NCBI RefSeq assembly: GCF_000142905.1
Contig: NW_013657631.1
Location: forward strand, 257,323-289,101
From: Thecamonas trahens ATCC 50062
Taxonomy: Eukaryota > Protista > Apusomonadida
DNA: 31,779 nt
Direction: 5' to 3'
Of this stretch, positions 1-29,785 are shown one piece after another; position 1 is the first letter of the stretch, and each line of letters opens with the position of its first letter. The notes below the pieces were generated by a model that was not told where the DNA came from, searched no databases, and worked only from the letters and a program-made list of their open reading frames with translations. Both the position numbers and the translations under genes were made by a program.

Positions 1-129
1 CGGACAAGTCCCTCCCTCCCCCCCTACTCCCCCCCCCCCCTACCCCCCCCCCAACCTCCTCCCCCCTACCCCCCCTACCCCCCCTGCCCCCCTCCACTCA
101 CCCTCCTCCACTCCATCCCACCACCGTAG
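1..129 (+). other. Probable 3' part of an intron (C-rich low-complexity tract ending in TAG acceptor)
   Basis: C-run-rich tract with CTCAC at ~97-101, then ...ccaccgTAG|GAG GTG in frame with the kinase ORF. No convincing donor site lies in the window. Confidence 0.55.
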
Positions 130-3100: not shown

Positions 3101-3294
3101 TTTACAACCGCCAGATCGAGCCGCCGTTCAAGCCCAACGTCGCCGACGCCTCGTCCACCGCCAACGTCGACGAGGAATTCCTCAACATGTCTGTCGCCGA
3201 CACCCTTGTCGAGCCCTCGGAGCTGTCTTCGGTCGTCCAGGGCTCGGCCTTTGATGGCTTCTCCTACGTCGCCGACTCTGCCTTTAACAACTGA
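130..3294 (+). CDS. Multidomain AGC-family Ser/Thr kinase (Akt/SGK/S6K-like): degenerate RhoGAP, SH3-like, two Ras-association domains, kinase and AGC C-tail. Probably the last exon of a gene starting upstream
   Basis: Kinase motifs GRGGYGKV, YAMK, YRDLKPEN, DFGLCK, TLCGTAEYLAPE and hydrophobic motif FDGFSY. N-terminal VFGVPL...VPAVV...LP..LIP...FGPAFIR matches the RhoGAP pattern. There is no ATG before the domain start; an in-frame TAG at 127-129 after a pyrimidine-rich tract looks like a 3' splice site. Confidence 0.9.
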   Translation, partial: EVTSPFAVFGVPLAQSLSNAGQAPNEVPAVVDAAITALLALPSLPDGFSISLSNDYQSVQNVRMQADDCESPELSGLSASELVDVVRMFVSALPAALIPADTAKAMILLTTTAPSTGRADKYRYLLGTLAPAERALLTRILEAIRRMVKAPGVSMANAVAAFGPAFIRDPESSTLSKLRLDALQPLVAVLAGEYASLFSTPVEGSVEYVSFGVTRATLVPFSSSFLAADASDVVFIMRQAGNAPLWYGESSSGAGHFPPAAVQVVGFLPPLHGSAAAAPRPKAVTSNATALRGAPLTISIGGKTVYNGAIQHSSAFKEAMASASPSIAITLVTGETTSLLAVGDNAVLEHKMRLVVEDSLLHAVTAMDPAMPAGAALSIAVTTEAGPSTVLMYVPKGSKLVHVNGALATAFGVPAGLCETTVGEVSSTTAGESDALQLEADVPDAQFAFAVTGRAAAVEPAGASTATAAAGGSGTGAGASAAATGAGASAANSTGASSSGASAGGDGGDDGGEATYGGAPIILQIWFREGSYKKLKSTSETPCFEVVAKIASNRAAKAEAYTLALVAAKSDTPFKYLGDEDLPSAVLKSKPGSRLMFVRKLQRSGDAAVNVRELNRKSSVSIVQVFYEDHYSSFRCSPATTAAELAEQVMRKPVFAGKDLSAYALYEKVGELQRQLEPSELPSDLFTKYQSEGVVVQFVLRHKTLELGEYAFIEERTRKEKVKLEDFDLLKVIGRGGYGKVCQVQKKDTGGIYAMKIISKASIVKEKDLLHTKEEQRILASIKHPFLLHLQYSFQTPEKLYLVMDYINGGELFFHLSNEGFFPEEQAKFYTAELVLALDHLHSHNILYRDLKPENVLLDAEGHVRLCDFGLCKATASTTGTLCGTAEYLAPEMLKGEGYGPEVDWWEVGVLMYEMRTGAPPFVAEEGESQVDLFRKVLYSNPPVDPAVFSDNAASLLLGLMEKDPSQRLGSNSVEDIKSHPFFACYDWDALYNRQIEPPFKPNVADASSTANVDEEFLNMSVADTLVEPSELSSVVQGSAFDGFSYVADSAFNN

Positions 3295-11169: not shown

Positions 11170-13506
11170 CTACGGTTGGGCGAGGAGGTAGGTCTTGAGG
11201 GCGGGGAAGATCGGCGAGCCGAGGCCGGTGGCCGCATCCCATCCCTCGGCGGCGGGGTAGCCCCAGGCGGAGCAGCCGATCCAGAGCGATCCGGGCTGCG
11301 AGTCGAGGTTGCACGTCTGGTCGTAGTACATGGCGGTGGTGACCTGGCGGCAGTGGTTGGAGCCCTGAGTGATGTCCGAGAAGGTGCCGATGGGCGCGGC
11401 GTAGAGGTACGGGTTGAGGAAGCCGATGGACGACTTGCCGGCGGCGTACCGCGCGTCGTTGATGAGCGAAATGAGGCCGGCAAACGACGGTGATGACGCT
11501 GACGTGCCGTCGATGCCCGGCATGACCGAGCATGAGCCACTGTCAAACGCGCTGATCTCAAAGTTGTGGCCCATAAAGGCGACGTCCGGCGCCCCGCGTC
11601 CGCCCTGTGCAAAGACTGCAGCCGGCGGCAGCGCCGCCGCGTTCGCCGACAGGTACCCAGCCGCGGCCTTGGCCTGCCAGGTCGGGACCGGGTGGAACTG
11701 CGAGAAGAAGCCGGCCGAGGTGATGGCGGCGCCGGTCTCCGAAGAGCAAGTCACTTCGGTGTTCGGGCCAGTGCACTCGGGCTCGCCCGGGCAGGTGAGC
11801 ATGGTCGCGCCGACCGCGGTCACGTACGGCGACGCGGCCGGGTACTGCGACTGCAGCGAGGCGTCGACTCCGAGGCCGGGGTTGACCGGCTTGCCGTACT
11901 CGTACGCGCCAATGGTGCACGTGATTCCGTTTGCCTGCCATGTCTTGGTCGGGAACTGCGAGGTTGAGCAGTTGGACGAGACCGTCGGCTGGGCGGCGGT
12001 ACAGTCCGGGCCAAAGATTGAGGTCATCTCGAGCGAGCAGCCTGCCTCGGCCACAAAGGTGCCAGAGGTAAACTCGGAGATGGCGGTCGGGCAGACTTCG
12101 AGGACGATCTGGCAGATGAAGCCGCGACCCATGCCGCCGACAGGGATGGCACATGTAAATGACTCGGTCGAGCCCGAGTCCGACGGCGCCGACGCGGTGA
12201 CCGACAGCTGGTTGACGACGCCGTCAGCGTAGCCGGTCTGGTACGGCAGGTTCGACGAGTCGCCGGCAGCGCCGTCGTCGCCGGTCGCAACCATGACAGT
12301 CCACCCGCGGACGCCAAACTTGACAAACTCGGCATCGACGGCGGCAATGTACTTGGCCGAGTCGTAGCCAAACGACGGGCAGTACTGGGTGATGTTCGCC
12401 AGGTCGGCATCGCACTGCCACACCTCGGGCAGGCCGTACGAGAGTGAGAAGACCTGCGGCGTCGACGAGCTGGGTCCGTCCTGTCCAGTCACCTCGTACA
12501 CCCAGTTGAGCATCCACTCTTGCTGGTGCTGCTCGTCAATGTCCGAGTTCCACACCCAGGTCTCGATCCCGGCCCCAATCGACGTCATGTAGTCGACGTC
12601 GAGGTCGGCCTCCAGCTGGCCGGCTGCGCACGTCTCATTGGGTGCAATGCCCCAGCAGTTGTAGCCCTTGGACTGCGCAATCTTGCCGTACGTCGCGTTG
12701 TCAAAGGTCTCGACAAACTGAGCTAGGCACTCGGGGTTGTAGAACGAGCCAAACGAGCCGATGCACTGCTTAGCCATTGTCGCCACCGGTGTGTAGTCGA
12801 TGCCATAGAAGTCGCGCAGCAGCGCAGGCGTCACCTGCGTGTATCGGCCCTTGTACTGCGACTTGCTGCCGCTCGTTGCGACTGTGTCCGCCCCGGTCGT
12901 CGCCTTCTGGCCCGCCCGCTGCGGATGCGAAAAATGGAAGACCTCAGCGAGGCCCGAGACAAGGGCCACGTGCGGCGCAAGCGCCGCAGGCACATGCGCC
13001 GACGATGTGATCGCCAGCTGCGTCGGCGCCGCCTCACCGAGCGCCTTCTTGTCCGCCACCGACATCCAAACGCCCATCTTGGTCCGGAACATCCGCTCGA
13101 CGGTACTCACCGAAGCCGTGATTTTGAGCGTGTCCGAGCGGACCTCGACGGCGACCGGGAACTCGGCGAGCCAGGCCATGACGGCCTCGGCGGCACCGGC
13201 CCGAGCCGCAAACAGCGCCTCGGTGGCCTCAAAGTCGAGATGCTGGCCAGCACGCGGCGAGCCAGGGCTCGACACCGCCAGCAGCTCTGCCTCCAGCTCC
13301 TCCATGGTTTTTTCACGCACTAAATGCACGCGGAACGTGACCCGAGTCTCGCCACCGGCATCGCCTACAAGCACAAAGCCCAGCGGAGCGACCTCCCGCT
13401 TGGCCACCGCCACCCTGTCGCCGTTGTACCCCGTCGTCGTCGTCGCCATGCACATACCCACCAAGCAGATCAGGCCCAGAAGACCAAGCCCAATACCCTT
13501 GTTCAT
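11170..13506 (-). CDS. Peptidase S53 (sedolisin / tripeptidyl-peptidase 1-like) precursor
   Basis: Signal peptide and pro-domain (VSSPGSPRAGQHL, V.AWL); catalytic EADLD (Glu, Asp); oxyanion ATGDDGA; YPAASPYVTAVGAT; GRGAPDVA; GTSASSP (Ser); Ca-site GWDAATGLGSP. Confidence 0.92.
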   Translation of the reverse strand: MNKGIGLGLLGLICLVGMCMATTTTGYNGDRVAVAKREVAPLGFVLVGDAGGETRVTFRVHLVREKTMEELEAELLAVSSPGSPRAGQHLDFEATEALFAARAGAAEAVMAWLAEFPVAVEVRSDTLKITASVSTVERMFRTKMGVWMSVADKKALGEAAPTQLAITSSAHVPAALAPHVALVSGLAEVFHFSHPQRAGQKATTGADTVATSGSKSQYKGRYTQVTPALLRDFYGIDYTPVATMAKQCIGSFGSFYNPECLAQFVETFDNATYGKIAQSKGYNCWGIAPNETCAAGQLEADLDVDYMTSIGAGIETWVWNSDIDEQHQQEWMLNWVYEVTGQDGPSSSTPQVFSLSYGLPEVWQCDADLANITQYCPSFGYDSAKYIAAVDAEFVKFGVRGWTVMVATGDDGAAGDSSNLPYQTGYADGVVNQLSVTASAPSDSGSTESFTCAIPVGGMGRGFICQIVLEVCPTAISEFTSGTFVAEAGCSLEMTSIFGPDCTAAQPTVSSNCSTSQFPTKTWQANGITCTIGAYEYGKPVNPGLGVDASLQSQYPAASPYVTAVGATMLTCPGEPECTGPNTEVTCSSETGAAITSAGFFSQFHPVPTWQAKAAAGYLSANAAALPPAAVFAQGGRGAPDVAFMGHNFEISAFDSGSCSVMPGIDGTSASSPSFAGLISLINDARYAAGKSSIGFLNPYLYAAPIGTFSDITQGSNHCRQVTTAMYYDQTCNLDSQPGSLWIGCSAWGYPAAEGWDAATGLGSPIFPALKTYLLAQP

Positions 13507-14272: not shown

Positions 14273-17200
14273 ATGGCGGCTGTATCGGCGTCGTCATCGA
14301 CGGGGCCTGGACTCGATCCGGAGCATGACCCGAGCCTGTGGCAGGAGCTGACAACCGAGGACGGGCTGGTGTACTACTACAATGCTGGGCTTGACATTAC
14401 CCAAGAGGACAAGCCGGCGTGCTTGCGGACCGATGGCGACGAGGCGTTTGATGGCGCGTGGGCATGGGTGCCTGATGAGCAGGAAGGCTACGTCGCCGGG
14501 CGGGTTATCGAGACCAATGCTAACGACGAGCCGGCGGTCATCGAGCTCATCGACGGCGGTACTCGCCGTGTACCCAAGAAGGACCAGGGCTCGACATTTA
14601 CCCTCTCACCGGGCTCGCTCCGCAAGAACCGTGACGACCTTGTGCAGATGGGCGAGATCGACGAGGGCATCATTCTCCACAACCTCAAGAAGCGGTTCAT
14701 GGAGGATACCATTTACACCAACATCGGGCCGATTCTCATCATCGTCAACCCGTACCGGTGGATGAAGCTCTACACCGAAGAGATCATGGAGAAGGTTCGC
14801 AACCGCGGCATCCAGATGCTCAAGCCGCACATCTTCAACATTGCCGACGACGCTTTCCGGCAGTTGTCGGAGAAGATGGCGTCGGGCGAGAATCCGAATC
14901 AGTCGATCCTCATTTCAGGCGAGTCGGGTGCCGGCAAGACCGAGGCGACCAAGCAGGCGCTCAAGTACCTTGCGCACTGCGCCGGGTCGGGCGAGACCTC
15001 GGGCGTGGAGCAGAAGCTGCTTGCGGCGAACCCGCTGCTGGAGGCGTTTGGCAACGCGGCGACGCTGCGGAACCACAACTCGTCGCGGTTTGGCAAGTGG
15101 ATGGAGGTGTTTTTTGACTCACGGCGGCGGATTGTGGGCGCCAAGATCAACAACTACCTGCTGGAAAAGTCGCGTGTCTCGCACCAGATCGGCGGCGAGC
15201 GCAACTTCCACATTTTCTACCAGCTCTGCCAGGCGCGCGAGATTGCGGAGATGTACTCGCTGGGGCGGGCAGAGGAGTATGCGTTTGTGCGCGGGCGGAC
15301 GGTCATCGACGACGCGCACTTTTCAGATGCCAAGGACTTTGCCGAGGTGCTGGAGGCGATGGACATGTTCAACATCAAGGAGGGTGCGGACCGGCAGTCG
15401 ATTTTCCGGTTGGTGGCGGGTATTCTCCACTTTGGCAACCTTGAGTTTGCTCGCGATGACTCGGGCGAGGGCTCGCGCATTCGCAACCCCGAAACGCTCG
15501 CGGTCGCAGCCAGCATGTTCTGTGTGCCAGAGGCTGCGCTCGAGCGTGCGGTCTTGTTCCGGACGCTGACGTTCAAGCGGCAGGATGACGTCATTGTGCC
15601 GCTTACGCCAGAGCAGGCAGCCGACAACCGCAACGCACTGGCACGAACGCTGTACAACTCGATGTTCAACTGGCTGGTGGTGCGGGTCAACCAGGTGCTT
15701 GCGCCCAAGGGCGGAGTCGGCGGCCTCAACCTCATCGGGATCCTGGACATTTTCGGGTTTGAGATTTTCCAGAACAACTCGTTCGAGCAGCTCTGCATCA
15801 ACTACGCTAACGAGAAGCTGCAGCAGCACTTTAACCAGCACACGTTCAAGATGGAGCAGCAGCTGTACATGGACGAGGGCATCAACTTTGAGGAAGTCAA
15901 GTTTGTGGACAACCAGCCGTGCCTGGACCTGCTCGAGCGTAAGCCGCACGGCATCCTCATCATGCTTGACGAGGAGCTGCTCGCGCCGTCGGGTTCTGAC
16001 GATCGGTTCCTAGACAAGCTCAACTCACGGCACTCGAAGAAGACGGAGCGGTTCTCGATGGCGTTCCGGACGCCCAACACGTTCAACGTGGAGCACTACG
16101 CTGGACAGGTGACGTACGACGTGCGCGGGTTTCTGGAGAAGAACAAGGACACGATTGAGAAGGATCTGCTGACGCTTGTGCACGCGTCGACAGACCAGTT
16201 CATCCAGCACTTGTTTGAGTCTGTGGGCGCCGACTCCAAGTCGCGAAAGCAGAGTACGGCGTTCCAGTTCCGGACGCAGCTCGGGTCGCTGATGAAAGAG
16301 CTTCAGGCGACGACGCCGCATTATGTGCGGTGCATCAAGCCGAACTCGGTGTTCAAGCCGCGGATCTGGAGCGGGCGCGACTCGCTGCTCCAGCTGCGGT
16401 ACTCGGGAGTGTTTGAGGCTGTCCGCATCCGGCAGACCGGGTTCCCGTTCCGGTACAGCCACGCCGAGTTTATCCGGCGGTACGGGGTGTTCAACTCGTG
16501 GGCGCGCAAGTCGAGCGAGGCTGCGACGTGCAAGGACATTCTGGAGAGCGTGCGCGGCGACTTTTCCGAGGTGCAGATCGGACGGACGCGCGTGCTGTAC
16601 CGGGCCAAGATGCACCGTGCGCTCGAGGTGCGACTGTCGATCATTCTGCATCGGATGGCGACCAAGGCGCAGGCCGCGTTCCGTGGATTCCGGGCACGCA
16701 AGCTGTTTGCGCAGATGAAGAAGGTGGACGCGGCGATGCGTGCGGCGATGGCAACGCTGGACGTGGACACGCTCCGTGCAGCGATTTCCGAAGCACGTGC
16801 GATGTGGTTCCAACTCGGGGTGACAGACGAGGCGGAGCGGCTGTGCGCGCGGCTTGAGGAGGAGCGCGGGCTGAACGCGGCGATGGAGCGGCTGCGGACT
16901 GCTGGTGACCCAGAGGGCAACTACGAGGAGATTTTCCGGGTCATCTCGCGGGCCGAGGAGCTTGGGGTGGTCAACCCAGACATTGCGGTTCTGCGCGAGT
17001 CGATCCGGTCGATCCACGAGCGCAAGCAGGCGGTGAAGGACCTGGAAGAGGGCGCACGTGAGTTTGACAAGAAGCGGCTCGAGGCCGGGCTGGAGGCTGT
17101 TTCACGGCTCGGCATCTCGTGCGCCGGCGCGGTAGCGACGGCACAGCGCGTGCTGGACCTCATCCTCTCTGAGGAGTCGCTGGTCTCGCGGTGCTCGGCC

Positions 17201-20200
17201 GCGCTGTACTCTGCTCAGGATGATCTGCAGGGTCTGCAAGAGGCGCTCTCTGAGGTGTCGGCGTTCCAGATCCGGACCGAGGCCGGCAAGCTGCTACGGT
17301 CGAAGCTGTCGGCTACGGTCGGCATCCGTGTGGCGATTCGTGACCAGGACTGGGATGGGCTGCGATCTGCAGTGGATGCGGCGCTCGCACTGGGGCTTGC
17401 CGGTATGCCAGATGTTGTGGCGGCGGAGGAGGGCCTCGCGCTGAGGGCGCGGATGGCAGAGGTGGGATCCGCGCTGGTGGCTGAGGTTCCGCGCAAGGTG
17501 CTCCCGGCGCTCCTTGCGGTGCTGGCGCAAGCGCGCGAGCTGGAGATGGGTAGCTCGCTGTACTCGTCGTGGCGCGACGAGGTGGCGGGCGCAGAGGCGC
17601 AGGCGGCCGCGCATGCGGCGTTGCTGGAGGATTTGCGGACGCAGCTCAAGCCACTGGAACGGACAGTGACGCCGGCGCGGGCGGTGCTGGAGCTCAAGAC
17701 ACAGATTGGCGTTGCAGACGAGTTCGGGCTTGTGGCGCAGGACGACCTGGCGCTTGTTGAGGCGGCGCGGACGCTGCTCGCTGTTCGCGAAGGGGTGTCT
17801 GGGAAGGAGTGGCGGAAGCTGGAGAACGCCGTGGCGTCTGCTGCGCGGCAGCCGAGCATTGCGGACCACCCGGAGGTTGCGGCGGGCAAGGAAGGTCTTG
17901 CGCTGCGGGCCAAGATGCTCGGCGTGGCCGGGCAGCTCTCGACGCAGATGTCGGCGCGTGCGATGCAGGGTCTGGCGCAGGCGCTCGAGGACGCGGAGGC
18001 GCTTGACATGAAGACCTCGTACTGGTCGACGTGGGAGGACGTGGTTGTGGCCGGAGAGGTGCAGCTGGCGCAGCACAAGCGGATTGTCAAGAACCTCAAG
18101 GCTTGCACGGGACCTGGGACTCAGCTGCAGATCGATTCGCTGGAGGCAGCGCTTGCTGACGCGCGCGCGTTTGGCCTGCGGCAGCCTGCAGACACGGCGC
18201 TTGTCTCGCTCGGCACGCTCCTCCTGGAGCTGCGGCGCGCACTGGCGGCGCGCGACTGGGCGGTGTTGGGCCAGTGCGTGGCGCGTGCGGCGTCGTCGGG
18301 AATCTCAGCGCCGGAAGTGGCACAGGTCAAGGCCGGCCTCGAGCTGCGGGAGCAGATGCACGAGGTTGCATCGCGACTGAGCGTGGCCAAGGCGAAGCAC
18401 GACTCTGAGGCGCTGCGCGACGCGATGGGCACAGCAGTGCGGCTGGAGATGGAGGACTCGATGTGGTCGACGTGGAGCGAGCTTGTTGTGGCGTGCGAGA
18501 ACCAGCTCCGGCGGCATCTGGAGCTGCTGCGTGCGCTGCGTGCGACGCTCGCACCCGGCACCTCGAAGCTCATTGACCAGCTGCAGTCTGTGCTCAACAA
18601 TGTGGCGGCGTTTGGGTTCAAGACCCGTGACGACTGCGTGCTCGAGGAGCAGGGCCGGATTACGCTCTCGCTCCGCAAGGCGATTGCGGCGCGGGCATGG
18701 GACGACATTGCCGGCGCGCTGGCGTCTGCCGCAGCGGCCGGCTACACCTCGACCGAGGTCTCTGCCGCCAACTCCGGCCTGGAGCTGCGGGCTAAGATGG
18801 AGGTGGTGGCGACCAAGCTGAGCAAGGCGGCTGCGGCGCATGATGCCAAGGCGATGGCGGCTGGTCTGGGCGAGGCCGACACGCTGGAGATGGCTACGTC
18901 ATACTGGTCGACGTGGTCCGAACTGCTGGAAAGGTGGAGCGGCAGCTGGTTACCCACCGGGCTGTTGTGGCGTCGCTCAAGGAGACGACGGCACCAGGCA
19001 CGTCCAAGCTTGTTGAGCCGCTACAGGACGCGATCGAGGCTGCGACCGAGTACGGGCTGTGGACGGACTTGGACGCAGACTTGCTCCGCGGAGCGGAGAT
19101 CACGCTGCAGGCACGGATTGGGTTTGCGTCGCGCGATTGGGAAGCTGTCCGCAAGGCGACGCAAGCTGCGTTTGTGGCCGGGCACGAGACCTCTGAGCTC
19201 CGCGAGCTTGCCGAGGGACTCAAGCTCCGGGCGAAGATGTCTGGTGTGGCCGAGGCGCTACGCCGTGCGATGGAGGCACACGACGCGGTGGCGCTGGACG
19301 CGGCGCTGCTGGACGCGTCGGGCCTGCGGATGGAGAGTTCAGCGTGGTCGACGTGGCAGGAGCTGATGGAGAAGGCGCGGGCGCAGCGAACGCAGCACGC
19401 GGATTTGCTCAGCGACTTGCGGCACTGGCTATCGGCTGGCAAGGAACGTGCGATCGAGCCGCTGGCCGACGCGCTTGCAGCCGGAGTGCAGTACGGTTTC
19501 TGTGTGGCAGAGGACGTGCAGGTGCTTAACGAGGCCAAGCTCGTTCTCCAAATCCGCAAGGGCTTCGATGCCAAGGACTACACGTCTGTGCGGTCGCAGG
19601 TGCGGCGGGCAACGCAGCTTGGACTCGCCAGCTCGCGCGAAATCGCGGCAGCGGCGCAAGTGCTTGAGGCGCGGTCGCAGATGGAGGCGACTGCTCGCAA
19701 GCTCAAGGCCGCGGCAGCGGCGCACGACGCGCCGGCGTTGAGGGCGGCACTTGTGGAGGCGCGCGGGTGCGAAATGGGTACATCGCCGCACTCGTCATGG
19801 GTCTCGGAGGTGGTGGAGGCCAAAGAGCTGCTGTCGAAGCATCGGTCGCTGCTTGTGCGGCTCCGAGTGGCGGCGGCACCCAAGTCGCGTAACCTGATTG
19901 GGCCGCTTGCGGCGGCGCTGCAAGAGGCGATCGACTTTGGGCTGTGGACACCTGCGGACGCAGGAGTGCAGCAAAACGCATCGATTGTGCTCCGTGCGCG
20001 ACAGGCTCTCGACGCGCAGTCGTGGCAGGGTCTCAAGGCCGCGCTTGACTCTGCGCTAGTGGCGCAGCTGGACAACGAGGAGATCCGGTGGTACCGCGAG
20101 GGCCTTGCGCTGCGGCACAAGATGAGCGCAGTGGCCGAGTCGCTGGAGCGCGCTGTGCGCAGCCGCGACGTCGACGCACTGGTGGCTGGTGTGGAGGAGG

Positions 20201-21597
20201 CGACGACCCGCGAGGTGGACATGATCTCGTCGCCGTGGTCGTCGTGGTCGCCGCTGGTCGACTCTGCAGCGGAGCTGGCGGAGGAGGGCAAGTCGCTGCG
20301 GACGAGGCTGCGGTCGTCGCTGGAGCCGCCGGCCGAGGTGGGTGATGCCAGCGCAGCCGAGGCGGCGCACCTTGCGCTGCTGGATGCTGCCGACGAGTAC
20401 GGGTTTACGCTCGGCGACGACCTCGAGCTTGTGCGGCAGTCGCGGCTGTACCACCAGGTCCGTGTTGCGCTTCGTAGCTCCGACTGGAGCCGGCTCGAAG
20501 CCACGCTCCGGTCTGCGCTCAGCTTTGGAATGGAGAGCCCGGAACTTGCAGCGGCGGCAGAGGCTGTGCATCTTGCACGGCAGCGTGCCGAGATGGCAGC
20601 GCTGCTCAAGTCGGCAATGCAAGACGTGTACAACTACGAGCGCAACGTGCTCGGGATGGCACTGGAGCAGGCGGAGCCGCTGCGGCTGCACGAGTCCGAG
20701 TACGCGCTGCTAGAGCAGGAGGCGAAGAAGCTGGCGGCACAGATCGAGACAGTGCGCGGCTCGCTGGAGAGCGGGACTGCCAATGTGGATGCTGCGGAGC
20801 TGAGCGTTGCGCTGGAGCTCGCGGCCGACATCGGGTACGAGACGGTGCAGGTGGCATCTGCACGTGTGCTCCTCCACGAGATCCAGTCGATTGTGGACGG
20901 AGCGTCTGTGGCGCTTTCGACCCGCGACGTCAAGGTGCTGCAGCAGCTGCTGCGGCGGGCCAAGATGATCAATCTTCGGGCGCCGCCGATTCCGGAGATC
21001 GAGATGAAGCTGCCTTTGTTTGTGTACTCGGAAGGTGACAAGCAGGTGAAGGACTTTGAGCGGCTGCGCGACGCTGAGAGCTTTGCGTCAAAGAAGTGGT
21101 TCGGACGGAGCTCGGCAGCGCAGAGCATGCTCATGTGGTCGGGCTCGCCGCTGCCCAACTCGCTGACGCAGCTCGACTCGGCCGGTGAAGTCAAGATTGC
21201 GTTGCAGGCGTTCACCAATTTGCTGGCGTACATGGGCGACCGCAAGTCCGGTGGGGTGTTCTCGTCCAAGAAGGCCGGCGGTGAGAAGCCGATGCGGTTC
21301 CTCGTCGAGCTCGGACGCGGCAACTCGGGCTCGCCGCTCGCAGATGAGCTCTACGTCCAGCTTGTCAAGCAGCTGAGCGAGAACCCGCATGTAGAGTCGG
21401 AGGCCTTTGGCTGGCGGCTCATGGAGGCGTACGTTCAGACCTTCCTCCCCTCGGCCGCCTTTTTCGTCTACCTCGAGTGGTTCCTCATCAACCAGCCCGT
21501 GGTCGACGGCCGCCCCGGGGCCGCACAGTACGTTGCCTGGCTCCGCGGGACGCGTGCCGAAGGCGCCGCTGGTGCCGCCAGCGCGTCGAGTGCGTGA
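14273..21597 (+). CDS. Giant unconventional myosin A (class IV-like): WW, N-terminal SH3-like, motor, one IQ, 7 x ~147-aa repeats, MyTH4; ~2440 aa after correcting a 1-nt frameshift at 18930-18932
   Basis: WQELTTEDGLVYYYN (WW), GESGAGKTE, LEAFGNA, NSSRFGK, LDIFGFE, FEQLCINYANEKLQ, HYVRCIKPN, AQAAFRGFRARK (IQ), and LAYMGD...DELYVQLVKQL...GWRLM...F.PS (MyTH4). ORFs 13649-19366 and 18913-21597 join into one repeat-consistent protein. Confidence 0.92.
14603..17031 (+). repeat. Copy 1 of a ~2.43-kb near-perfect direct repeat (myosin motor, IQ and proximal tail)
   Basis: Matches 22194-24622 at a constant offset of 7591 nt; I found about a dozen substitutions by eye and no indels. Confidence 0.95.
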
Positions 21598-21739
21598 GGA
21601 TATTGCCTGATAAAGTGATCAAAGCTTTGCCGTTGCGGGCACAGCTGTTGTTGGGAGCGGTGGCAGGAGCGGTGGCTGCGCCAGTGCCTGCCACTCCACT
21701 TTCGTCGACTTGCGTGAGCAAGGAACGAGCAGCTGGAGC

Positions 21740-21762
21740 AAGCGAGCGAGCGAGCGAGCGAG
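21740..21762. repeat. (GCGA)n microsatellite between the two myosins
   Basis: agcgagcgagcgagcgagcgag. Confidence 0.75.
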
Positions 21763-21851
21763 GGCACGACACAGCAGGCTTGGTCTGTGACGTTGGTACT
21801 GACTGTGTGATTGAAAGAAGACACCATTTTGTACACGTTGTAGGTGTGCGT

Positions 21852-24800
21852 ATGTCTGCGTTGGCAAGTCGGTCCGGAGTGAGCGAGGCCGAAGCAGCCG
21901 AGCTGGCGCGTGACCCGAGCCTGTGGCAGGAGCTGACAACCGAGGACGGGCATGTGTACTACTACCATGCGGTGTTGGACGTAACCGACGAGGACAAACC
22001 GCGGTGTCTCCGCGGCGGCGACGAAGATGGTTATGACGGCGCAGAGTGGGTCTGGGTCCCCGACGAGGTCGATGGCTACAAGGCCGGCAGAGTCCGTGGC
22101 TCGGACCCGGCGACAGGCCTGCCGCTCGAGGTCGACATTCTCGATGGTGAGCTTGTGGTTGTCCGCAAGAAGGACCGTGCTCGGTGCTTGCCACTCTCGC
22201 CGGGCTCGCTCCGCAAGAACCGTGACGACCTTGTGCAGATGGGCGAGATCGACGAGGGCATCATTCTCCACAACCTCAAGAAGCGGTTCATGGAGGATAC
22301 CATTTACACCAACATCGGGCCGATTCTCATCATCGTCAACCCGTACCGGTGGATGAAGCTCTACACCGAAGAGATCATGGAGAAGGTTCGCAACCGCGGC
22401 ATCCAGATGCTCAAGCCGCACATCTTCAACATTGCCGACGACGCTTTCCGGCAGTTGTCGGAGAAGATGGCGTCGGGCGAGAATCCGAATCAGTCGATCC
22501 TCATTTCAGGCGAGTCGGGTGCCGGCAAGACCGAGGCGACCAAGCAGGCGCTCAAGTACCTTGCGCACTGCGCCGGGTCGGGCGAGACTTCGGGTGTGGA
22601 GCAGAAGCTGCTTGCGGCGAACCCGCTGCTGGAGGCGTTTGGCAACGCGGCGACGCTGCGGAACCACAACTCGTCGCGGTTTGGCAAGTGGATGGAGGTG
22701 TTTTTTGACTCGCGGCGGCGGATTGTGGGCGCCAAGATCAACAACTACCTGCTGGAAAAGTCGCGTGTCTCGCACCAGATCGGCGGCGAGCGCAACTTCC
22801 ACATTTTCTACCAGCTCTGCCAGGCGCGCGAGATTGCGGAGATGTACTCGCTGGGGCGGGCAGAGGAGTATGCGTTTGTGCGCGGGCGGACGGTCATCGA
22901 CGACGCGCACTTTTCAGATGCCAAGGACTTTGCCGAGGTGCTGGAGGCGATGGACATGTTCAACATCAAGGAGGGCGCGGACCGGCAGTCGATTTTCCGG
23001 TTGGTGGCGGGTATTCTCCACTTTGGCAACCTTGAGTTTGCTCGCGATGACTCGGGCGAGGGCTCGCGCATCCGCAACCCCGAAACGCTCGCGGTCGCAG
23101 CCAGCATGTTCTGTGTGCCAGAGGCTGCGCTCGAGCGTGCGGTCTTGTTCCGGACGCTGACGTTCAAGCGGCAGGATGACGTCATTGTGCCGCTTACGCC
23201 AGAGCAGGCAGCCGACAACCGCAACGCACTGGCACGAACGCTGTACAACTCGATGTTCAACTGGCTGGTGGTGCGGGTCAACCAGGTGCTTGCGCCCAAG
23301 GGCGGAGTCGGCGGCCTCAACCTCATCGGGATCCTGGACATTTTCGGGTTTGAGATTTTCCAGAACAACTCGTTCGAGCAGCTCTGCATCAACTACGCTA
23401 ACGAGAAGCTGCAGCAGCACTTTAACCAGCACACGTTCAAGATGGAGCAGCAGCTGTACATGGACGAGGGCATCAACTTTGAGGAAGTCAAGTTTGTGGA
23501 CAACCAGCCGTGCCTGGACCTGCTCGAGCGTAAGCCGCACGGCATCCTCATCATGCTTGACGAGGAGCTGCTCGCGCCGTCGGGTTCTGACGATCGGTTC
23601 CTAGACAAGCTCAACTCACGGCACTCGAAGAAGACGGAGCGGTTCTCGATGGCGTTCCGGACGCCCAACACGTTCAACGTGGAGCACTACGCTGGACAGG
23701 TGACGTACGACGTGCGCGGGTTTCTGGAGAAGAACAAGGACACGATCGAGAAGGATCTGCTGACGCTTGTGCACGCGTCGACAGACCAGTTCATCCAGCA
23801 CTTGTTTGAGTCTGTGGGCGCCGATTCCAAGTCGCGAAAGCAGAGTACAGCGTTCCAGTTCCGGACGCAGCTCGGGTCGCTGATGAAGGAGCTCCAGGCG
23901 ACGACGCCGCATTATGTGCGGTGCATCAAGCCGAACTCGGTGTTCAAGCCGCGGATCTGGAGCGGGCGCGACTCGCTGCTCCAGCTGCGGTACTCGGGAG
24001 TGTTTGAGGCTGTCCGCATCCGGCAGACCGGGTTCCCGTTCCGGTACAGCCACGCCGAGTTTATCCGGCGGTACGGGGTGTTCAACTCGTGGGCGCGCAA
24101 GTCGAGCGAGGCTGCGACGTGCAAGGACATTCTGGAGAGCGTGCGCGGCGACTTTTCCGAGGTGCAGATCGGACGGACGCGCGTGCTGTACCGGGCCAAG
24201 ATGCACCGTGCGCTCGAGGTGCGACTGTCGATCATTCTGCATCGGATGGCGACCAAGGCGCAGGCCGCGTTCCGTGGATTCCGGGCACGCAAGCTGTTTG
24301 CGCAGATGAAGAAGGTGGACGCGGCGATGCGTGCGGCGATGGCAACGCTGGACGTGGACACGCTCCGTGCAGCGATTTCCGAAGCACGTGCGATGTGGTT
24401 CCAACTCGGGGTGACAGACGAGGCGGAGCGGCTGTGCGCGCGGCTTGAGGAGGAGCGCGGGCTGAACGCGGCGATGGAGCGGCTGCGGACTGCTGGTGAC
24501 CCAGAGGGCAACTACGAGGAGATTTTCCGGGTCATCTCGCGGGCCGAGGAGCTTGGGGTGGTCAACCCGGACATTGCGGTTCTGCGCGAGTCGATCCGGT
24601 CGATCCACGAGCGCAAGCAGGCAATTGTTCAACTTCGGCGCGGGATCAGCGAGTACTCGCGGGCCGACCTTGAGGCTGGGCTGGCGGCTGTGGCGCGGCT
24701 GGGGCTGAGTGCCCAGGAGCTTGTGGCGGCTGGACATGCAGCGCTGGAGCAGCTGAGGGCGGAAGAGGGTTTTGTGACGCTGGCGCAAGCGGCGCTCTCT

Positions 24801-27800
24801 GCCGGCCAAGCGAATGTAGGTGGAGTGCGGGATGCGCTGGAGGCTGGGCGGCGGATGGTGCTACGTACGAAGGGTGGCAAAGCGCTGATGGCAAAGCTGG
24901 AGGCTGTGCTTGCGGTGCGCGAAGCGCTTGTAGCGCGCGAATGGGAAGCGCTCCGGCGGGCTGTCGAGGCTGCACTGACGATGGGTCTTGGCGAGCTGGG
25001 GGACGTGGTTGCGGCACGCGAGGGGCTTGCGCTGCGTGAGCGAATGTCGGGCGTGGCGCGAGAGTTGAGCGCGGCGCAGGCGTCCAAAGTGCTGCTGACG
25101 CTGGAGGTGGCGCTAGCTCGTGCGCGTGAGCTGGAGATGGGCAGCTCGCTGTACTCGTCGTGGCGCGACGAGGTGGCGGATGCGGAGGCACAGGCAGCAG
25201 AGCATGCGTCGCTGGTCGGCGCGCTTGAGTCTTACACGGCGAGCAGCTCATCTTCTGTGGTAGGCCCACTGGAAGCAACGCTTCGTGCTGGCAAGGCGTT
25301 TGGATTTGTTGCGACGAGTGACGTAGAGCTGATGCAGCGCGGCGAGCTTCTGCTGCAGCTGCGGCGGCATCGCAGTGCACGCGAGTTTGAGGCGCTAGGC
25401 ACCCTCATGGAGACGATCGAAGCGGCCGCAAACAGGGTGCAGCTCTGGAATGTCCACGACGAGGTGGCCGACGTTGTGGCTGGGCTTGAGCTTCGCGCGT
25501 CGATGGCGGCGCACGCCGACACGATTGCGGAGGCTGTTGCTGGACGCGATGCCGACGCGCTGCATGCTGCGCTTGTGGCCGCGGACGATGGCGAGCCGCT
25601 GCTGATGTCGACGTCTTTCTGGTCGTCCTGGGTCGACGAGGTTGCAAGCGGTGCGAGTTTCTTGGAGCAGCTCCGGGCGGTACTGCGGGGCTGGAAGCGG
25701 CGAGCTTGCCTGCGGGCGACATGGCCAAGTTTGAGAGCTCTGTCTCGGACGTAGCGCTGGGCATGGAGGCTGCCGTGAAGTCCGGACGCAAGCTTGGGCT
25801 AGTGCGCGAGGTCGACGTGGCGCTCCTCGAGTTTGTGGAGGAGCTGCTTGCACTGCGTCGTGGATTGTTTGACCGCAAGTGGGCGAGCATGCAGGCGAGC
25901 GTGCGGCGGGCAAGCGAGCTCGGGTTCGGCGAGCATAGTGATGTGAGCTACGTGCGCGACGGGCTGCGGCTGCGGGCCAAGATGAGCGGCGTGGCACAGC
26001 GACTGGAGGCTGCGACGCGGGTGGCCGATGCCGACGTGCTGGTGGACGAGCTCAACATGGCGGCGTCACTCAAGATGAGCTCGTCGTACTGGTCCAGCTG
26101 GCAGGATGTGGTGAGCCGCGGGCAGGAAAAGCTCGCTGCGCACCGCGCAGTGGTGGCAGAGCTCGATGAGGCGCTTAACGTGTGGCACGACGGCGACGTG
26201 GCGGCAGCGACGTCGGCGGTGGCGGCGGGCGAGGCGTTCGGGTTTGGGATGCCGGACGATGTGGCACGGCTGGCGCTGGCACGCGATGTGCTCAAGGTCC
26301 GCCATGCTGTAGCAAGCGGGTCGTGGCAGGAGCTTGAGGGCTTGAGCGGACCGCATGCGGAGCTGGAGCGCGCGCAGCAGATAGTGGCGGATCGTCGTGC
26401 GATGGCTGCGCTCGTGCCTACGCTCGAGCAGGCAGCGGCCGGCCGCAATGCGGCCGACCTTGCGGCAGCAATCCATGCCGGGCGCAAGCTGAAGATGGAC
26501 ACTGCAGAGTATTCCTCGTGGCATGCAGAGATGGCGGCGGCCAAGACTGCGCTAACAACGCACCGTGCTATTCTTGCCAGGCTTCGGAGCGCGAGTGCGG
26601 CGCGTGCGTCACTGCGGTCAGAGGGGCTAGCGGTTGCAGTGGCCGCTGCAGAGGCGCTCGGGTTGCGAAAGGCGAGCGAAGTGGCAGAGCTGGAGCGCGC
26701 ACAGGTAGCGCTGCGGCTCCGTGTGGCCGAGTCGAGTGAGTCGTGGGACGAGCTCGCGAGTGCGTTGGACTCTGCGCTTGTGGTGCAGCTGGAGAACGAG
26801 GAGACGAAGCGTGCGCGTGCCGGGCTTGCGCGGCTGCGGCGGATCGACAAGCTTGCAGAGAAGATGGAAGCGGCGATGATGATGCGGCACACTGGAGTTC
26901 TTGCGCTCTGCCTGACTGTTGCGGCGGAGGAAGACATGGAGTGGAGCAGCTGGTCGCGGTGGCGGGGGCTTGTGGGTGAGGCGCGGGCTGTGCAGGCGCG
27001 GTCGGCGGAGCTGCGTGAGCAGCTGCGAGAGACGCTGGAGGTACCGAGCGGGACGAGCGGGCGGTCTGCGGCGTTTCTGGGCGCGCATGCTCGTGTACTC
27101 GACGAGGCGGCCGACTTTGGGTTTGAGCTCAAGGAGGACGTGGACCTGTTTGCCAGCTCGAAGATTGTGTACCTCGTGCGCGAAGCGTGGGCGAAGCAGG
27201 CGTGGGCAGAGCTTGAGCAGCACCTCAAGACGGCAGCGGCGTGTGGAGTGCAGTCGAGCGAGCTTGTTGTGGCGGTGGAGGCGCTGCACGAGTGGGCGCA
27301 GATGTCCGGGCTGGCGTCGCTGGTAGAGGCCGCGGTTGCAGACCGGGCCAACTACGCGCGCGGGACACTGCGGAGCGTGCTGGAGCAGGCACGAGGAGCC
27401 GGGCTGGAGGAGAGCACCGAGTTTGGTGAGGTGTACGCAGCGGCGGCAAGAGTGCAGGCCGAGGTGGAGGCTGTGGACGAGCTTGTGGCGAGCGGGGCGG
27501 AGGAAGGGTCTGTGGAGAAGCTCAGTTCTGCACTTGCGCGTGCAGAGGCTATCGGGTACGACGGCGGCGGACGGGTGGCGGCGGCACGCAAGCTCCGCGA
27601 CGCACTTGCCGAGGCGTTTAACGAGGCCGAGCTCGGGTGCGCTGAGGGCGACGCCAAGATCCTGCAGGTTGCGGTGCGCAAGCTGAAGGCGCTGGGCGGT
27701 GAGGCCCGGCGGGTCTCTGACTACGAAGCCGAGCTCGCGATGTACCAGTACGAAGCCGGCGAGCTTGCGCTGGATGGGTACGGCGGGCTGCGAACACCGG

Positions 27801-28291
27801 AGGCGTTTGCGTCGACCAAGTGGTTCGGCAAGGCGGCTGCGGCTGCAGGGATGATGGAGTTTTCGGACAAGAGCCTTCCCAACTCGCTCGTGCAGCTCGG
27901 CGAGGCTGGCGAGGTGAAGACGGCTGTGGCGGCGTTTGATAAGCTGCTTGTGGTGTTTGGGCTCCGGCGCGGGTCGCGGAGCGCGGCGCTGGAAGCGCTG
28001 ATGGCGTTGGGGCGGAGCGGGAGTGGGACGCTACTTGCGACAGAGCTTTGGCTGCAGGTCATCAAGCAGATGAGCGGACGAAGCGTGAGCGCGGCGGAGC
28101 GTGTGACCGGGTACGAGGTTCTGAGTGCTTACGCGGGCGCGTTTGCACCGTCGGATGACTTTGCGCCGTTCCTCGACTGGTGGCTGATGACTGCCGGGCG
28201 CGGCGGCGGCGGCGAGGCTGGGGCGCAGGTTTGCGCGTCTGTGCGCCGGGCGTTGCGTGCGCTCCGCGGCGGCGTTGGAGCGTCACGGTAA
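21852..28291 (+). CDS. Giant unconventional myosin B, tandem paralogue: same architecture with 5 x ~147-aa repeats and a divergent MyTH4; ~2146 aa after correcting a 1-nt frameshift at 25687-25690
   Basis: The motor translation is the same as copy A. ORFs 21477-25754 and 25706-28291 join by adding one G (VLRGLEAASLPAGD). The C-terminal SLPNSLVQL...ELWLQVIKQM...FAPS aligns with the MyTH4 of copy A. Confidence 0.92.
22194..24622 (+). repeat. Copy 2 of the ~2.43-kb near-perfect direct repeat
   Basis: Matches 14603-17031. Confidence 0.95.
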
Positions 28292-29159: not shown

Positions 29160-29553
29160 NNNNNNNNNNNNNNNNNNNNNNNNNNNNNNNNNNNNNNNNN
29201 NNNNNNNNNNNNNNNNNNNNNNNNNNNNNNNNNNNNNNNNNNNNNNNNNNNNNNNNNNNNNNNNNNNNNNNNNNNNNNNNNNNNNNNNNNNNNNNNNNNN
29301 NNNNNNNNNNNNNNNNNNNNNNNNNNNNNNNNNNNNNNNNNNNNNNNNNNNNNNNNNNNNNNNNNNNNNNNNNNNNNNNNNNNNNNNNNNNNNNNNNNNN
29401 NNNNNNNNNNNNNNNNNNNNNNNNNNNNNNNNNNNNNNNNNNNNNNNNNNNNNNNNNNNNNNNNNNNNNNNNNNNNNNNNNNNNNNNNNNNNNNNNNNNN
29501 NNNNNNNNNNNNNNNNNNNNNNNNNNNNNNNNNNNNNNNNNNNNNNNNNNNNN
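29160..29553. other. Assembly gap (394 N) flanked by G homopolymers
   Basis: Run of n with ggggggg on both sides. Confidence 0.99.
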
Positions 29554-29631: not shown

Positions 29632-29785
29632 GTGGCTGTGGCTGTGGCTGTGGCTGTGGCTGTGGCTGTGGCTGTGGCTGTGGCTGTGGCTGTGGCTGTG
29701 GTGGTCGGCTCGTCGGTCGGTTCGTCGGTTCGTCGGTTCGTCGGTTCGTCGGTCGGTGGGTGGTGGCTGGTTGGCTGGTTGGCTG
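29632..29785. repeat. Compound microsatellite: (GTGGCT) x ~11, then (TCGGTTCG)n-like and (GGTTGGCT)n-like units
   Basis: Directly visible tandem units upstream of the kinase ATG. Confidence 0.9.

What the first reader, a model, noticed from the sequence alone, without database searches (positions are those of the whole stretch)
14273..28291. Tandem myosin pair: same motor, different-length modular tails (7 versus 5 repeats)
Seen: two head-to-tail genes 254 nt apart. Their motor, IQ and proximal tail are identical in protein sequence, but the tails differ in repeat number, and the gene-length difference (885 nt) is almost exactly two 441-nt units. Established: WW plus motor plus MyTH4 without FERM is the class IV myosin layout, and MyTH4 domains can bind microtubules. 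Inference: a two-component system with one engine and two spacers, acting as molecular rulers or actin-microtubule/membrane cross-bridges of two defined lengths, possibly for gliding, pseudopodial feeding or cortex spacing.
Basis: partly seen in the sequence, partly recalled or inferred. Interest (0 to 1): 0.85.

Follow-up and report, generated by a model that had tools for sequence, protein, structure and literature searches.

The report
Tandem class IV myosins sharing one motor
Two neighbouring class IV myosin genes of the gliding protist Thecamonas trahens have had their motor halves made identical by gene conversion, while their old, diverged tails carry 8 versus 6 copies of an uncatalogued 147-residue helical unit; this is a tidy natural case, not a new kind of system.

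Summary
Gene A (14273-21597) and gene B (21852-28291) lie head to tail, 254 nt apart. Their proteins are identical over 810 residues. The tails differ by exactly two ~147-aa units: 7 strong plus 1 degenerate in A, 5 plus 1 in B.

The window is Thecamonas trahens, and both genes are class IV myosins. The shared motor comes from a sharp-edged 2,429-nt gene-conversion tract. It has 12 differences, all synonymous. The flanks are old: tails 32% identical, N-termini 57%.

Contigs from four sequencing runs, two of them unrelated metagenomes, bridge the A-to-B junction, so this is not a mis-assembly. They also show that gene B's frame break is a missing G in the reference. Gene A's break sits in an A-run and was not tested.

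The pair is not a closed two-part system. The genome holds five class IV paralogues with about 2, 6, 6, 8 and 9 units. Canonical class IV myosins, including Acanthamoeba's, have two units, and other lineages have amplified the unit independently.

The unit is predicted with high confidence as three helical hairpins. It matches no Pfam family and no clear PDB fold. The "molecular ruler" idea remains untested.

The parts
14273..21597 (+). Gene A, a long class IV myosin (about 2,441 aa if read through one frame break). NCBI annotates it as 'myosin XI-2', 2,432 aa.
   Evidence: ORFs. 100% match to P0001 of Thecamonas trahens. Pfam finds Myosin_N, Myosin_head and MyTH4.
14327..14416 (+). Gene A WW-like segment (aa 19-48). 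It lacks the second Trp.
   Evidence: Motif located. No Pfam WW hit at E<=0.01. The N-terminus aligns at 47-51% identity with WW-positive class IV relatives.
14456..14584 (+). Gene A N-terminal SH3-like domain (Myosin_N)
   Evidence: Pfam PF02736, 33.9 bits, above the cut-off of 27
14633..16603 (+). Gene A motor domain. P-loop, switch I, switch II and LDEE are intact.
   Evidence: Pfam PF00063, 730 bits. Motifs located.
16667..16699 (+). Gene A single IQ-like motif (AQAAFRGFRAR)
   Evidence: Regex match. Not reported by Pfam IQ at E<=0.01.
14603..17031 (+). Gene-conversion tract, copy in gene A (2,429 nt)
   Evidence: 12 differences from the B copy, all third-position synonymous transitions. 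Dense differences begin immediately outside both borders.
17258..20829 (+). Gene A tail array of eight ~147-aa helical units, A1-A8 (A8 degenerate). A weak 'unit 0' lies at 16889-17254.
   Evidence: Profile HMM hits, unit alignments, AF2 models
18916..18921 (+). Gene A -1 frame break at GAAAGG. One more A would restore the frame and the repeat consensus. It is probably an assembly error, but this was not verified.
   Evidence: Sequence. The annotated model bridges it with a 26-nt pseudo-intron that destroys the conserved SYWSTW motif. No read evidence was obtained (searches found nothing).
21325..21492 (+). Gene A MyTH4 domain. No FERM or SH3 follows it.
   Evidence: Pfam PF00784, 50 bits, above the cut-off of 27
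21598..21851 (.). 254-nt intergenic spacer between gene A's stop and gene B's ATG
   Evidence: Contigs of four runs cross it without mismatch. It has no similarity to the region upstream of gene A.
21852..28291 (+). Gene B, a long class IV myosin (about 2,146 aa once the missing G is restored). It is AMSG_08941 in the Broad annotation.
   Evidence: ORFs. Identified in the supplement of PMC3942036. Pfam domains.
21912..22001 (+). Gene B WW-like segment (aa 21-50)
   Evidence: Pfam WW 17.3 bits, below the cut-off of 26.9. Motif located.
22044..22175 (+). Gene B N-terminal SH3-like domain (weak)
   Evidence: Pfam PF02736, 17.7 bits, below the cut-off
22224..24194 (+). Gene B motor domain, identical in protein to gene A's
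   Evidence: Pfam PF00063, 731 bits. Identity shown.
24258..24290 (+). Gene B IQ-like motif
22194..24622 (+). Gene-conversion tract, copy in gene B
   Evidence: Short-read contigs break at 22200-22229 and at 24622, as expected where two flanks converge on a duplicated stretch. Word depth in run X2 roughly doubles inside the tract.
24852..27550 (+). Gene B tail array of six ~147-aa units, B1-B6 (B6 degenerate). A weak 'unit 0' lies at 24480-24845.
25686..25690 (+). Gene B frame break. The reference lacks one G in a G-run, so the gene is intact.
   Evidence: 'G put in behind 25686' in contigs of X1, X2 and the independent estuary metagenome X9. The annotated 50-nt 'intron' at 25680-25729 is therefore an artefact.
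28034..28204 (+). Gene B MyTH4 domain (degenerate)
   Evidence: Pfam PF00784, 24.3 bits, below the cut-off of 27

Best explanation
These are two old tandem paralogues of class IV myosin in Thecamonas trahens. Each encodes a WW-like and an SH3-like N-terminus, a catalytically intact motor, one IQ, a long array of ~147-aa helical-hairpin units, and a terminal MyTH4 without FERM or SH3.

Shown here:
- The tails and N-termini diverged long ago.
- The tails changed length by internal duplication of middle units. The first and last units are positionally conserved, and A3/A4 are a gene-A-specific pair.
- A single recent gene conversion, or a few, copied 2,429 nt from one gene into the other. The tract covers the motor, the IQ and about 90 aa of proximal tail. 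This is why the 'engine' is identical.
- Since then only synonymous changes have accumulated, so both motors are under purifying selection.

Inferred:
- Both proteins work as ordinary actin-based class IV motors with the same kinetics.
- Their tails are extended alpha-helical arms that hold a MyTH4 partner-binding end at different distances and present different surfaces. This would be subfunctionalisation within a five-member family whose tails have about 2, 6, 6, 8 and 9 units.
For: - **Organism and class:**, with PMC3942036 for the class IV definition.
- **Conversion tract:** A 14603-17031 equals B 22194-24622, with 12 differences, all synonymous third-position transitions. P is about 2e-6 if transitions fell at random, and dS is about 0.02. 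Flanks are 50-68% identical in DNA. The A and B tails are 32% identical, no closer than A is to the unlinked paralogue on contig C1 (34%). The N-termini are 57% identical.
- **Real tandem:** contigs from the culture (2010 and 2020 runs) and from two unrelated metagenomes bridge A tail, spacer and B N-terminus.
- **Gene B intact:** an extra G is present in three runs.
- **Constraint in wild strains:** variants in the tract and in B's tail are mostly synonymous.
- **Motor motifs intact:**
- **Units:**, with the unit tree.
- **Family context:** five loci in the genome. Canonical class IV proteins, including Acanthamoeba's, have two units. Motor-to-MyTH4 distance across the class ranges from about 500 to 4,400 aa. 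Long-tailed forms fall in separate clades.
- **Predicted structure:** one unit has pLDDT 93.5 with six helices in a long-short x3 pattern. Three units have pLDDT 90.
Against: - Gene A's frame break was not checked against reads, so a real recent frameshift is possible.
- No RNA data were found, so expression of either gene is unknown.
- Short-read contigs cannot phase the 12 tract differences. A contig from the culture itself mixes A and B letters. The assignment of variants to copies, and any claim of one versus several conversion events, is therefore uncertain.
- Tail shape and length are not measured.
- Gene B's MyTH4 and both WW-like segments score below Pfam cut-offs.
- The motor tree held only class IV-like sequences and a class II outgroup.
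Confidence: 0.8

Rival explanations
1. The pair is a dedicated two-component system: one engine on two spacers of defined length. The spacers act as molecular rulers or as actin-microtubule or actin-membrane cross-bridges. Motor identity is kept by selection because both must work at the same speed.
For: The motors are identical in protein and the tails differ by exactly two units. The tail is predicted as a continuous helical repeat array, which could be rod-like. MyTH4 domains of other myosin classes bind microtubules (established knowledge). All post-conversion changes are synonymous.
Against: Five paralogues with about 2, 6, 6, 8 and 9 units exist, and only this pair shares a motor. The sharp tract borders do not coincide with the end of a domain on the 3' side, since the tract ends inside weak 'unit 0'. 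This fits a mechanical conversion event. The tails are only 32% identical, so they differ in far more than length. Gene B's MyTH4 is degenerate. No length, binding, localisation or expression data exist.
Confidence: 0.1
2. Gene A is a recently inactivated pseudogene. Its frameshift at 18916-18921 is real, so only gene B, together with the unlinked paralogues, is functional.
For: The assembled sequence has a -1 frame break there. It was not covered by the reads laid, and two attempts to find independent copies found nothing.
Against: The break sits in an A-run, and adding one A restores both the frame and the repeat consensus. The analogous break in gene B, in a G-run, is proven to be a reference error. 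Downstream of the break, 891 codons stay open. They keep four good units and the better-scoring MyTH4 of the two genes, at 50 bits. The 12 tract differences are all synonymous.
Confidence: 0.1
3. The tandem pair, or the identity of the motors, is an assembly artefact: a collapsed or duplicated repeat.
For: The reference has homopolymer errors and a 394-N gap nearby. Short-read contigs cannot span the 2.4-kb tract.
Against: Contigs from four runs and three independent sample sources cross the A-tail/spacer/B-N-terminus junction with 0-1 mismatches. Contigs break exactly at the tract borders. Both variants are seen at the 12 differing sites, and word depth about doubles inside the tract. Both flanks of each copy are unique and coding.
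Confidence: 0.02

Closest known systems
Canonical class IV myosin: Acanthamoeba castellanii high-molecular-weight myosin I / myosin IV (P0175, 1,571 aa), and the short T. trahens paralogue P0157 (1,629 aa)
   Same: N-terminal WW and SH3-like domains, motor 45-47% identical, one IQ, the same ~147-aa helical unit between IQ and MyTH4, and MyTH4 without FERM.
   Different: The canonical proteins have two units and a C-terminal SH3. Genes A and B have 8 and 6 units, no SH3, and a WW-like segment that lacks the second Trp and falls below Pfam's cut-off.
Gene conversion between tandem myosin heavy chain genes of vertebrates, for example the alpha/beta cardiac MYH6/MYH7 pair (from my own knowledge, not checked here)
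   Same: Neighbouring same-strand myosin paralogues with a homogenised stretch inside otherwise diverged genes.
   Different: Here the tract covers essentially the whole motor plus the IQ of an unconventional myosin in a protist. The flanks are far more diverged (tails 32% identical), so the contrast is extreme.
The other long-tailed T. trahens class IV paralogues (contig C1: P0154/AMSG_00218; contig C10: P0155/AMSG_02747), and long class IV-like myosins of other lineages (Rhodelphis marinus, 3,162 aa; metagenomic proteins up to 5,663 aa)
   Same: The same motor family and the same unit, amplified to many copies.
   Different: Their motors are only 58-61% identical to A/B, so no conversion is involved. 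They are unlinked. P0155 ends in two WW domains instead of a detectable MyTH4. The amplifications in other lineages sit in separate clades, so they are independent.
Alpha-solenoid and TPR-like helical repeat arms (for example the P58(IPK) TPR domain), and spectrin-type rods
   Same: Arrays of antiparallel helical hairpins. Local four-helix stretches superpose on TPR units at 3-4 A.
   Different: No match rises above background. Best Z is 8.1-8.2, Foldseek E is 0.018 or worse, and TM is 0.1-0.3. There is no sequence or Pfam relation, and the period is 147 aa made of three ~49-aa long-short hairpins.

Membership tests
Class IV myosin | The motor domain groups with class IV motors | tested here: met
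   The best named hits are WW-motor-MyTH4(-SH3) proteins of Acanthamoeba, Balamuthia, Stygamoeba and Rhizaria at 40-49% identity. Class II hits are at 34-35%. In the tree, gene A sits with the T. trahens paralogues inside the class IV set, with SH-aLRT 98 for the six-row clade. Caveat: other myosin classes were not in the tree.
Class IV myosin | A WW domain N- or C-terminal to the motor (PMC3942036) | tested here: inconclusive
   Pfam WW scores 17.3 bits in B (cut-off 26.9) and gives nothing in A at E<=0.01. The segment is present (LWQELTTEDGxVYYY) but lacks the second Trp. It aligns at 47-51% identity with the N-termini of WW-positive relatives.
Class IV myosin | MyTH4 in the tail, without FERM | tested here: met
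   Gene A scores 50 bits, above the cut-off of 27. Gene B scores 24.3 bits, just below it, but at the homologous position. No FERM was found in either.
Class IV myosin | C-terminal SH3 after MyTH4 (present in some members only, including one T. trahens protein) | tested here: not met
   Neither A nor B has an SH3 hit, and both end about 30 aa after MyTH4. The short paralogue P0157 has two SH3 domains. The feature is optional, so its absence does not exclude membership.
Class IV myosin | The helical region between IQ and MyTH4 is made of the ~147-aa unit | tested here: met
   The unit profile hits Acanthamoeba (E 1.9e-20, 2 units), Balamuthia, Stygamoeba, Arcella, Plasmodiophora and Lotharella. 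The modal count is 2, and class II outgroups have none. A has 8 units and B has 6.
Interlocus gene conversion between tandem paralogues | A near-identical tract with abrupt borders inside otherwise diverged paralogues | tested here: met
   99.5% identity over 2,429 nt. Dense differences start at the first codon outside each border. Flanks are 50-68% identical.
Interlocus gene conversion between tandem paralogues | Discordant divergence between the tract and the flanks (old duplication, young tract) | tested here: met
   Tract dS is about 0.02. The tails are 32% identical in protein, which is as far apart as A is from the unlinked C1 paralogue. Motors of unconverted paralogues are 58-61% identical.
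Single alpha-helix (SAH) or coiled-coil tail spacer | One long uninterrupted helix rich in E/K/R, or heptad coiled coil | tested here: not met
   The tail is Ala/Leu-rich (A 19-20%, L 12-13%). It is predicted as short antiparallel helices of 10-28 residues with loops. No coiled-coil program was run.
TPR / armadillo / spectrin repeat families | A sequence-profile or clear fold match | tested here: not met
   No Pfam hit in the repeats. Foldseek best E is 1.1 for one unit and 0.018 for three units, with TM 0.1-0.3. VIA Z is at most 8.2, the stated background for helical models. A weak match does not prove a new fold.

The most novel reading that the evidence does not exclude
The ~147-aa three-hairpin unit is an ancient, so far uncatalogued tail module of class IV myosins. 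It can be amplified like beads to set the reach of the motor. T. trahens would then keep a graded set of arms (about 2, 6, 6, 8 and 9 units). One pair runs on literally the same motor, so the only functional difference between A and B lies in the arm. That would make the pair a natural experiment on how tail length and surface tune an otherwise identical myosin.
Probability: 0.3. Interest if true: 0.65.

Novelty: new variant of a known kind. Interest (0 to 1): 0.45.

Why it matters
Class IV is one of the least studied myosin classes. No function is established for it, and its 500-aa region between IQ and MyTH4 has no domain annotation. This locus shows that the region is built from a defined, confidently foldable unit. 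The unit is shared from Acanthamoeba to Rhizaria and Rhodelphis and has been amplified independently several times.

The A/B pair gives two natural proteins with the same motor but different arms. That is a convenient starting point for asking what the class IV tail does and whether its length matters. It is also a clean example of gene conversion overwriting a whole motor domain between old paralogues. Such conversion would mislead motor-only phylogenies and paralogue counts.

On the practical side, the reference assembly and both published gene models are wrong at the two frame breaks.

Tried and rejected
- **Introns at the frame breaks:** rejected. The annotated 26-nt (A) and 50-nt (B) 'introns' remove conserved repeat residues, and reads show a missing G in B.
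- **Independent copies of gene A's break:** an exact DNA pattern allowing AAA or AAAA in JGI metagenome contigs found nothing. A protein search with the 252 aa before the break found nothing at E<=1e-20. Neither blank says anything about the site.
- **Word-indexed search with A's tail:** it found only the gene's own product. The exhaustive profile search was needed to find relatives.
- **Fold searches:** one unit against PDB by Foldseek, the ESM Atlas and VIA-align wide, and three units by Foldseek and VIA-align wide, gave only background matches.
- **Bacterial promoter/terminator scan of the spacer:** found nothing, and it is not relevant to a eukaryote.
- **Spacer versus gene A's upstream region and gene B's downstream region:** no shared element.
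- **Strain-level phasing of the 12 tract variants from contigs:** abandoned. A contig from the culture itself mixes A and B letters, so contigs are mosaics.
- **First three-unit alignment (A3):** discarded because overlapping rows aligned out of register. It was rebuilt as A4.
- **Handling of the breaks:** no read-through protein was handed to any search tool.
Full report
**Identity of the locus.** The window is from Thecamonas trahens ATCC 50062. The first 1,549 codons of gene A match NCBI's 'myosin XI-2', P0001, at 100%. Gene B is AMSG_08941 in the data set of Sebe-Pedros et al. 2014 (PMC3942036). The window lies on contig C49 of a 28.7-Mb assembly.

**The observation.**
- Gene A runs from 14273 to 21597 and gene B from 21852 to 28291, on the same strand.
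- The spacer is 254 nt and the length difference is 885 nt.
- Pfam finds Myosin_N, Myosin_head and MyTH4 in both genes. WW appears only as a sub-threshold hit in B.
- The motor has an intact P-loop, switch I, switch II and LDEE, and one IQ-like motif follows it.
- The proteins are identical over 810 residues.

**Frame breaks.** As assembled, each gene changes frame once by -1.
- The published models bridge these sites with a 26-nt pseudo-intron in A and a 50-nt pseudo-intron in B. The 26-nt one in A deletes the conserved SYWSTW motif of unit A4; the 50-nt one in B removes 17 residues of unit B2.
- I laid contigs of four runs on 19800-25799. Three of them insert a G behind 25686. Two are from the cultured organism (2010 and 2020) and one is from a 2025 estuary metagenome.
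- Gene B is therefore intact and the reference is wrong.
- Gene A's break (GAAAGG, 18916-18921) would be repaired in the same way by one more A, giving WSELLEKVERQL, which fits the unit consensus.
- The single read-laying run could not reach that site, and two other attempts found nothing.
- I put about 0.85-0.9 on an assembly error there.

**Is the tandem real?**
- Contigs from all four runs cross from A's tail through the spacer into B's N-terminus with 0-1 mismatches. Two of those runs are unrelated marine or estuarine metagenomes.
- Contigs end at 22200-22229 and at 24622. These are the borders of the duplicated tract, where a de Bruijn graph must branch.
- Both letters are seen at the sites where A and B differ.
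- Word depth in run X2 roughly doubles inside the tract.
- A mis-assembly is very unlikely.

**Why the motors are identical.**
- An ungapped comparison shows that A 14603-17031 equals B 22194-24622 (2,429 nt) except at 12 sites.
- All 12 are third-position synonymous transitions.
- The chance of 12 out of 12 being synonymous is about 2e-6 if transitions fell at random. dS is about 0.02.
- Differences become dense at the very next codon on both sides.
- Flanking DNA is 50-68% identical. The N-termini are 57% identical in protein and the tails 32%.
- A's tail is no closer to B's than to the tail of the unlinked paralogue on contig C1, at 34%.
- Motors of the unconverted paralogues are 58-61% identical to A.
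- This is the signature of interlocus gene conversion between old tandem paralogues, followed by purifying selection on both copies.
- Variants in the wild strains are also mostly synonymous, both in the tract and in B's private tail.
- Contigs cannot phase the 12 sites, because a contig from the culture itself mixes A and B letters. I therefore make no claim about the number of conversion events or about donor and acceptor.

**The tails.**
- A profile of the unit finds 7 strong plus 1 degenerate units in A (aa 996-2186) and 5 plus 1 in B (aa 1001-1900).
- A 26-unit profile adds a weak proximal 'unit 0' in both genes.
- Units pair by position: A1/B1 at 51%, A7/B5 at 38% and A8/B6 at 33%.
- In a unit tree, the first units of four paralogues form one clade (93/94). 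A7/B5 and A8/B6 are supported pairs. A3/A4 are a gene-A-specific pair (89/88). The middle units are unresolved.
- Length therefore changed by duplication or loss of middle units between conserved end units.

**Family context.**
- The genome has five loci with the unit. All five carry the same N-terminus and motor. They are A, B, C1 (8+1 units; P0154/AMSG_00218), C10 (5 units plus a partial one; P0155/AMSG_02747) and C37 (2 units, MyTH4 and two SH3; P0157).
- The motor tree puts the short C37 gene, with a metagenomic relative, as sister to (A,(C1,C10)).
- An exhaustive profile search of 1.84 billion representatives gave 256 hits at E<=1e-3. At least 52 of the best 150 carry a myosin motor and 44 carry MyTH4.
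- One hit is a 3,162-aa Rhodelphis marinus protein with 22 matched stretches.
- Canonical class IV myosins contain two units. These include Acanthamoeba castellanii, Balamuthia, Stygamoeba, Arcella, Plasmodiophora and Lotharella. Class II myosins have none.
- Across the class, the distance from motor to MyTH4 ranges from about 500 to 4,400 aa.
- Long-tailed forms fall in separate clades, so amplification happened several times.

**Structure of the unit.**
- No Pfam family covers the unit.
- AlphaFold2 with a 26-row alignment gives pLDDT 93.5 and pTM 0.82. The model has six helices in a long-short x3 pattern, which is three ~49-aa hairpins.
- Three consecutive units give pLDDT 90 and pTM 0.62, with helices running continuously across unit borders.
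- Foldseek and VIA-align find only background similarity to TPR, armadillo and other helical repeats.
- The tail is Ala/Leu-rich, so it is not an SAH.
- I could not obtain coordinates. An extended arm of roughly 3-5 nm per unit is an inference from the hairpin-array topology, not a measurement.

**Comparison with the literature.**
- Class IV (WW, motor, MyTH4, sometimes SH3) is reported in T. trahens by Sebe-Pedros et al. 2014 and by Kollmar and Muhlhausen 2017 (PMC5583752).
- The 2017 paper uses none of the terms 'gene conversion', 'tandem gene', 'tandem duplic' or 'repeat', and the passages of the 2014 paper that I read do not describe the tandem pair, the conversion or the repeat unit.
- Gene conversion among tandem vertebrate MYH genes is known. 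That statement rests on my own knowledge.

**Verdict.**
- The 'two-length ruler system' is one possible reading of a broader pattern. It is not supported by any direct evidence.
- The best account is an old tandem duplication, tail remodelling by unit duplication, and a recent conversion of the motor, within a five-member family.
- New here are the extent of the conversion, the recognition of the unit as a class-wide amplifiable module, and the corrections to the reference.
I tested the first two and partly tested the third.

Noticed in passing
window 25686 and 18916-18921: The reference assembly has homopolymer errors. A G is missing after 25686, which is proven, and an A is probably missing at 18917-18919. 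Both public gene models (P0001 'myosin XI-2' and AMSG_08941) paper over these sites with 26-nt and 50-nt pseudo-introns.
   Followed up: partly
G000 contigs C1:488212-495903 (+), C10:206221-199358 (-), C37:231238-226190 (-); loci L001-L007: Three further class IV paralogues carry 8+1, 5 plus a partial, and 2 copies of the same unit. The C10 protein (P0155) ends in two WW domains and shows no MyTH4. The C37 protein (P0157) is the canonical short form with MyTH4 and two SH3 domains.
   Followed up: partly
runs X9, X11, X12: Estuary and marine metagenomes from 2016-2025 hold this locus at about 98.5-99.5% identity. T. trahens or a very close strain is therefore present in natural waters, and its variants are almost all synonymous.
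   Followed up: partly
window 29160-29553: A 394-N assembly gap is flanked by G-rich sequence, followed by a perfect (GTGGCT)x11.7 microsatellite at 29632-29701 and (GTCGGTTC)n at 29716-29753. This explains the apparent low-GC bin at 29-30 kb.
   Followed up: no
window 9-122: A C-rich degenerate repeat (CCCCCCCTA-like, periods 16-42) lies just upstream of the ORF at 133-3294, whose C-terminal part reads like an AGC-type protein kinase.
   Followed up: no
window 11170-13506 (-): A 778-aa ORF with a signal-peptide-like start lies directly upstream of gene A on the opposite strand. By eye it looks like a secreted peptidase (sedolisin-like). It was not searched.
   Followed up: no
P0003, P0036, P0058: Giant class IV-like myosins carry many copies of the unit and up to 4,400 aa between motor and MyTH4. 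They include a Rhodelphis marinus protein of 3,162 aa and metagenomic proteins of 3,869 and 5,663 aa.
   Followed up: partly
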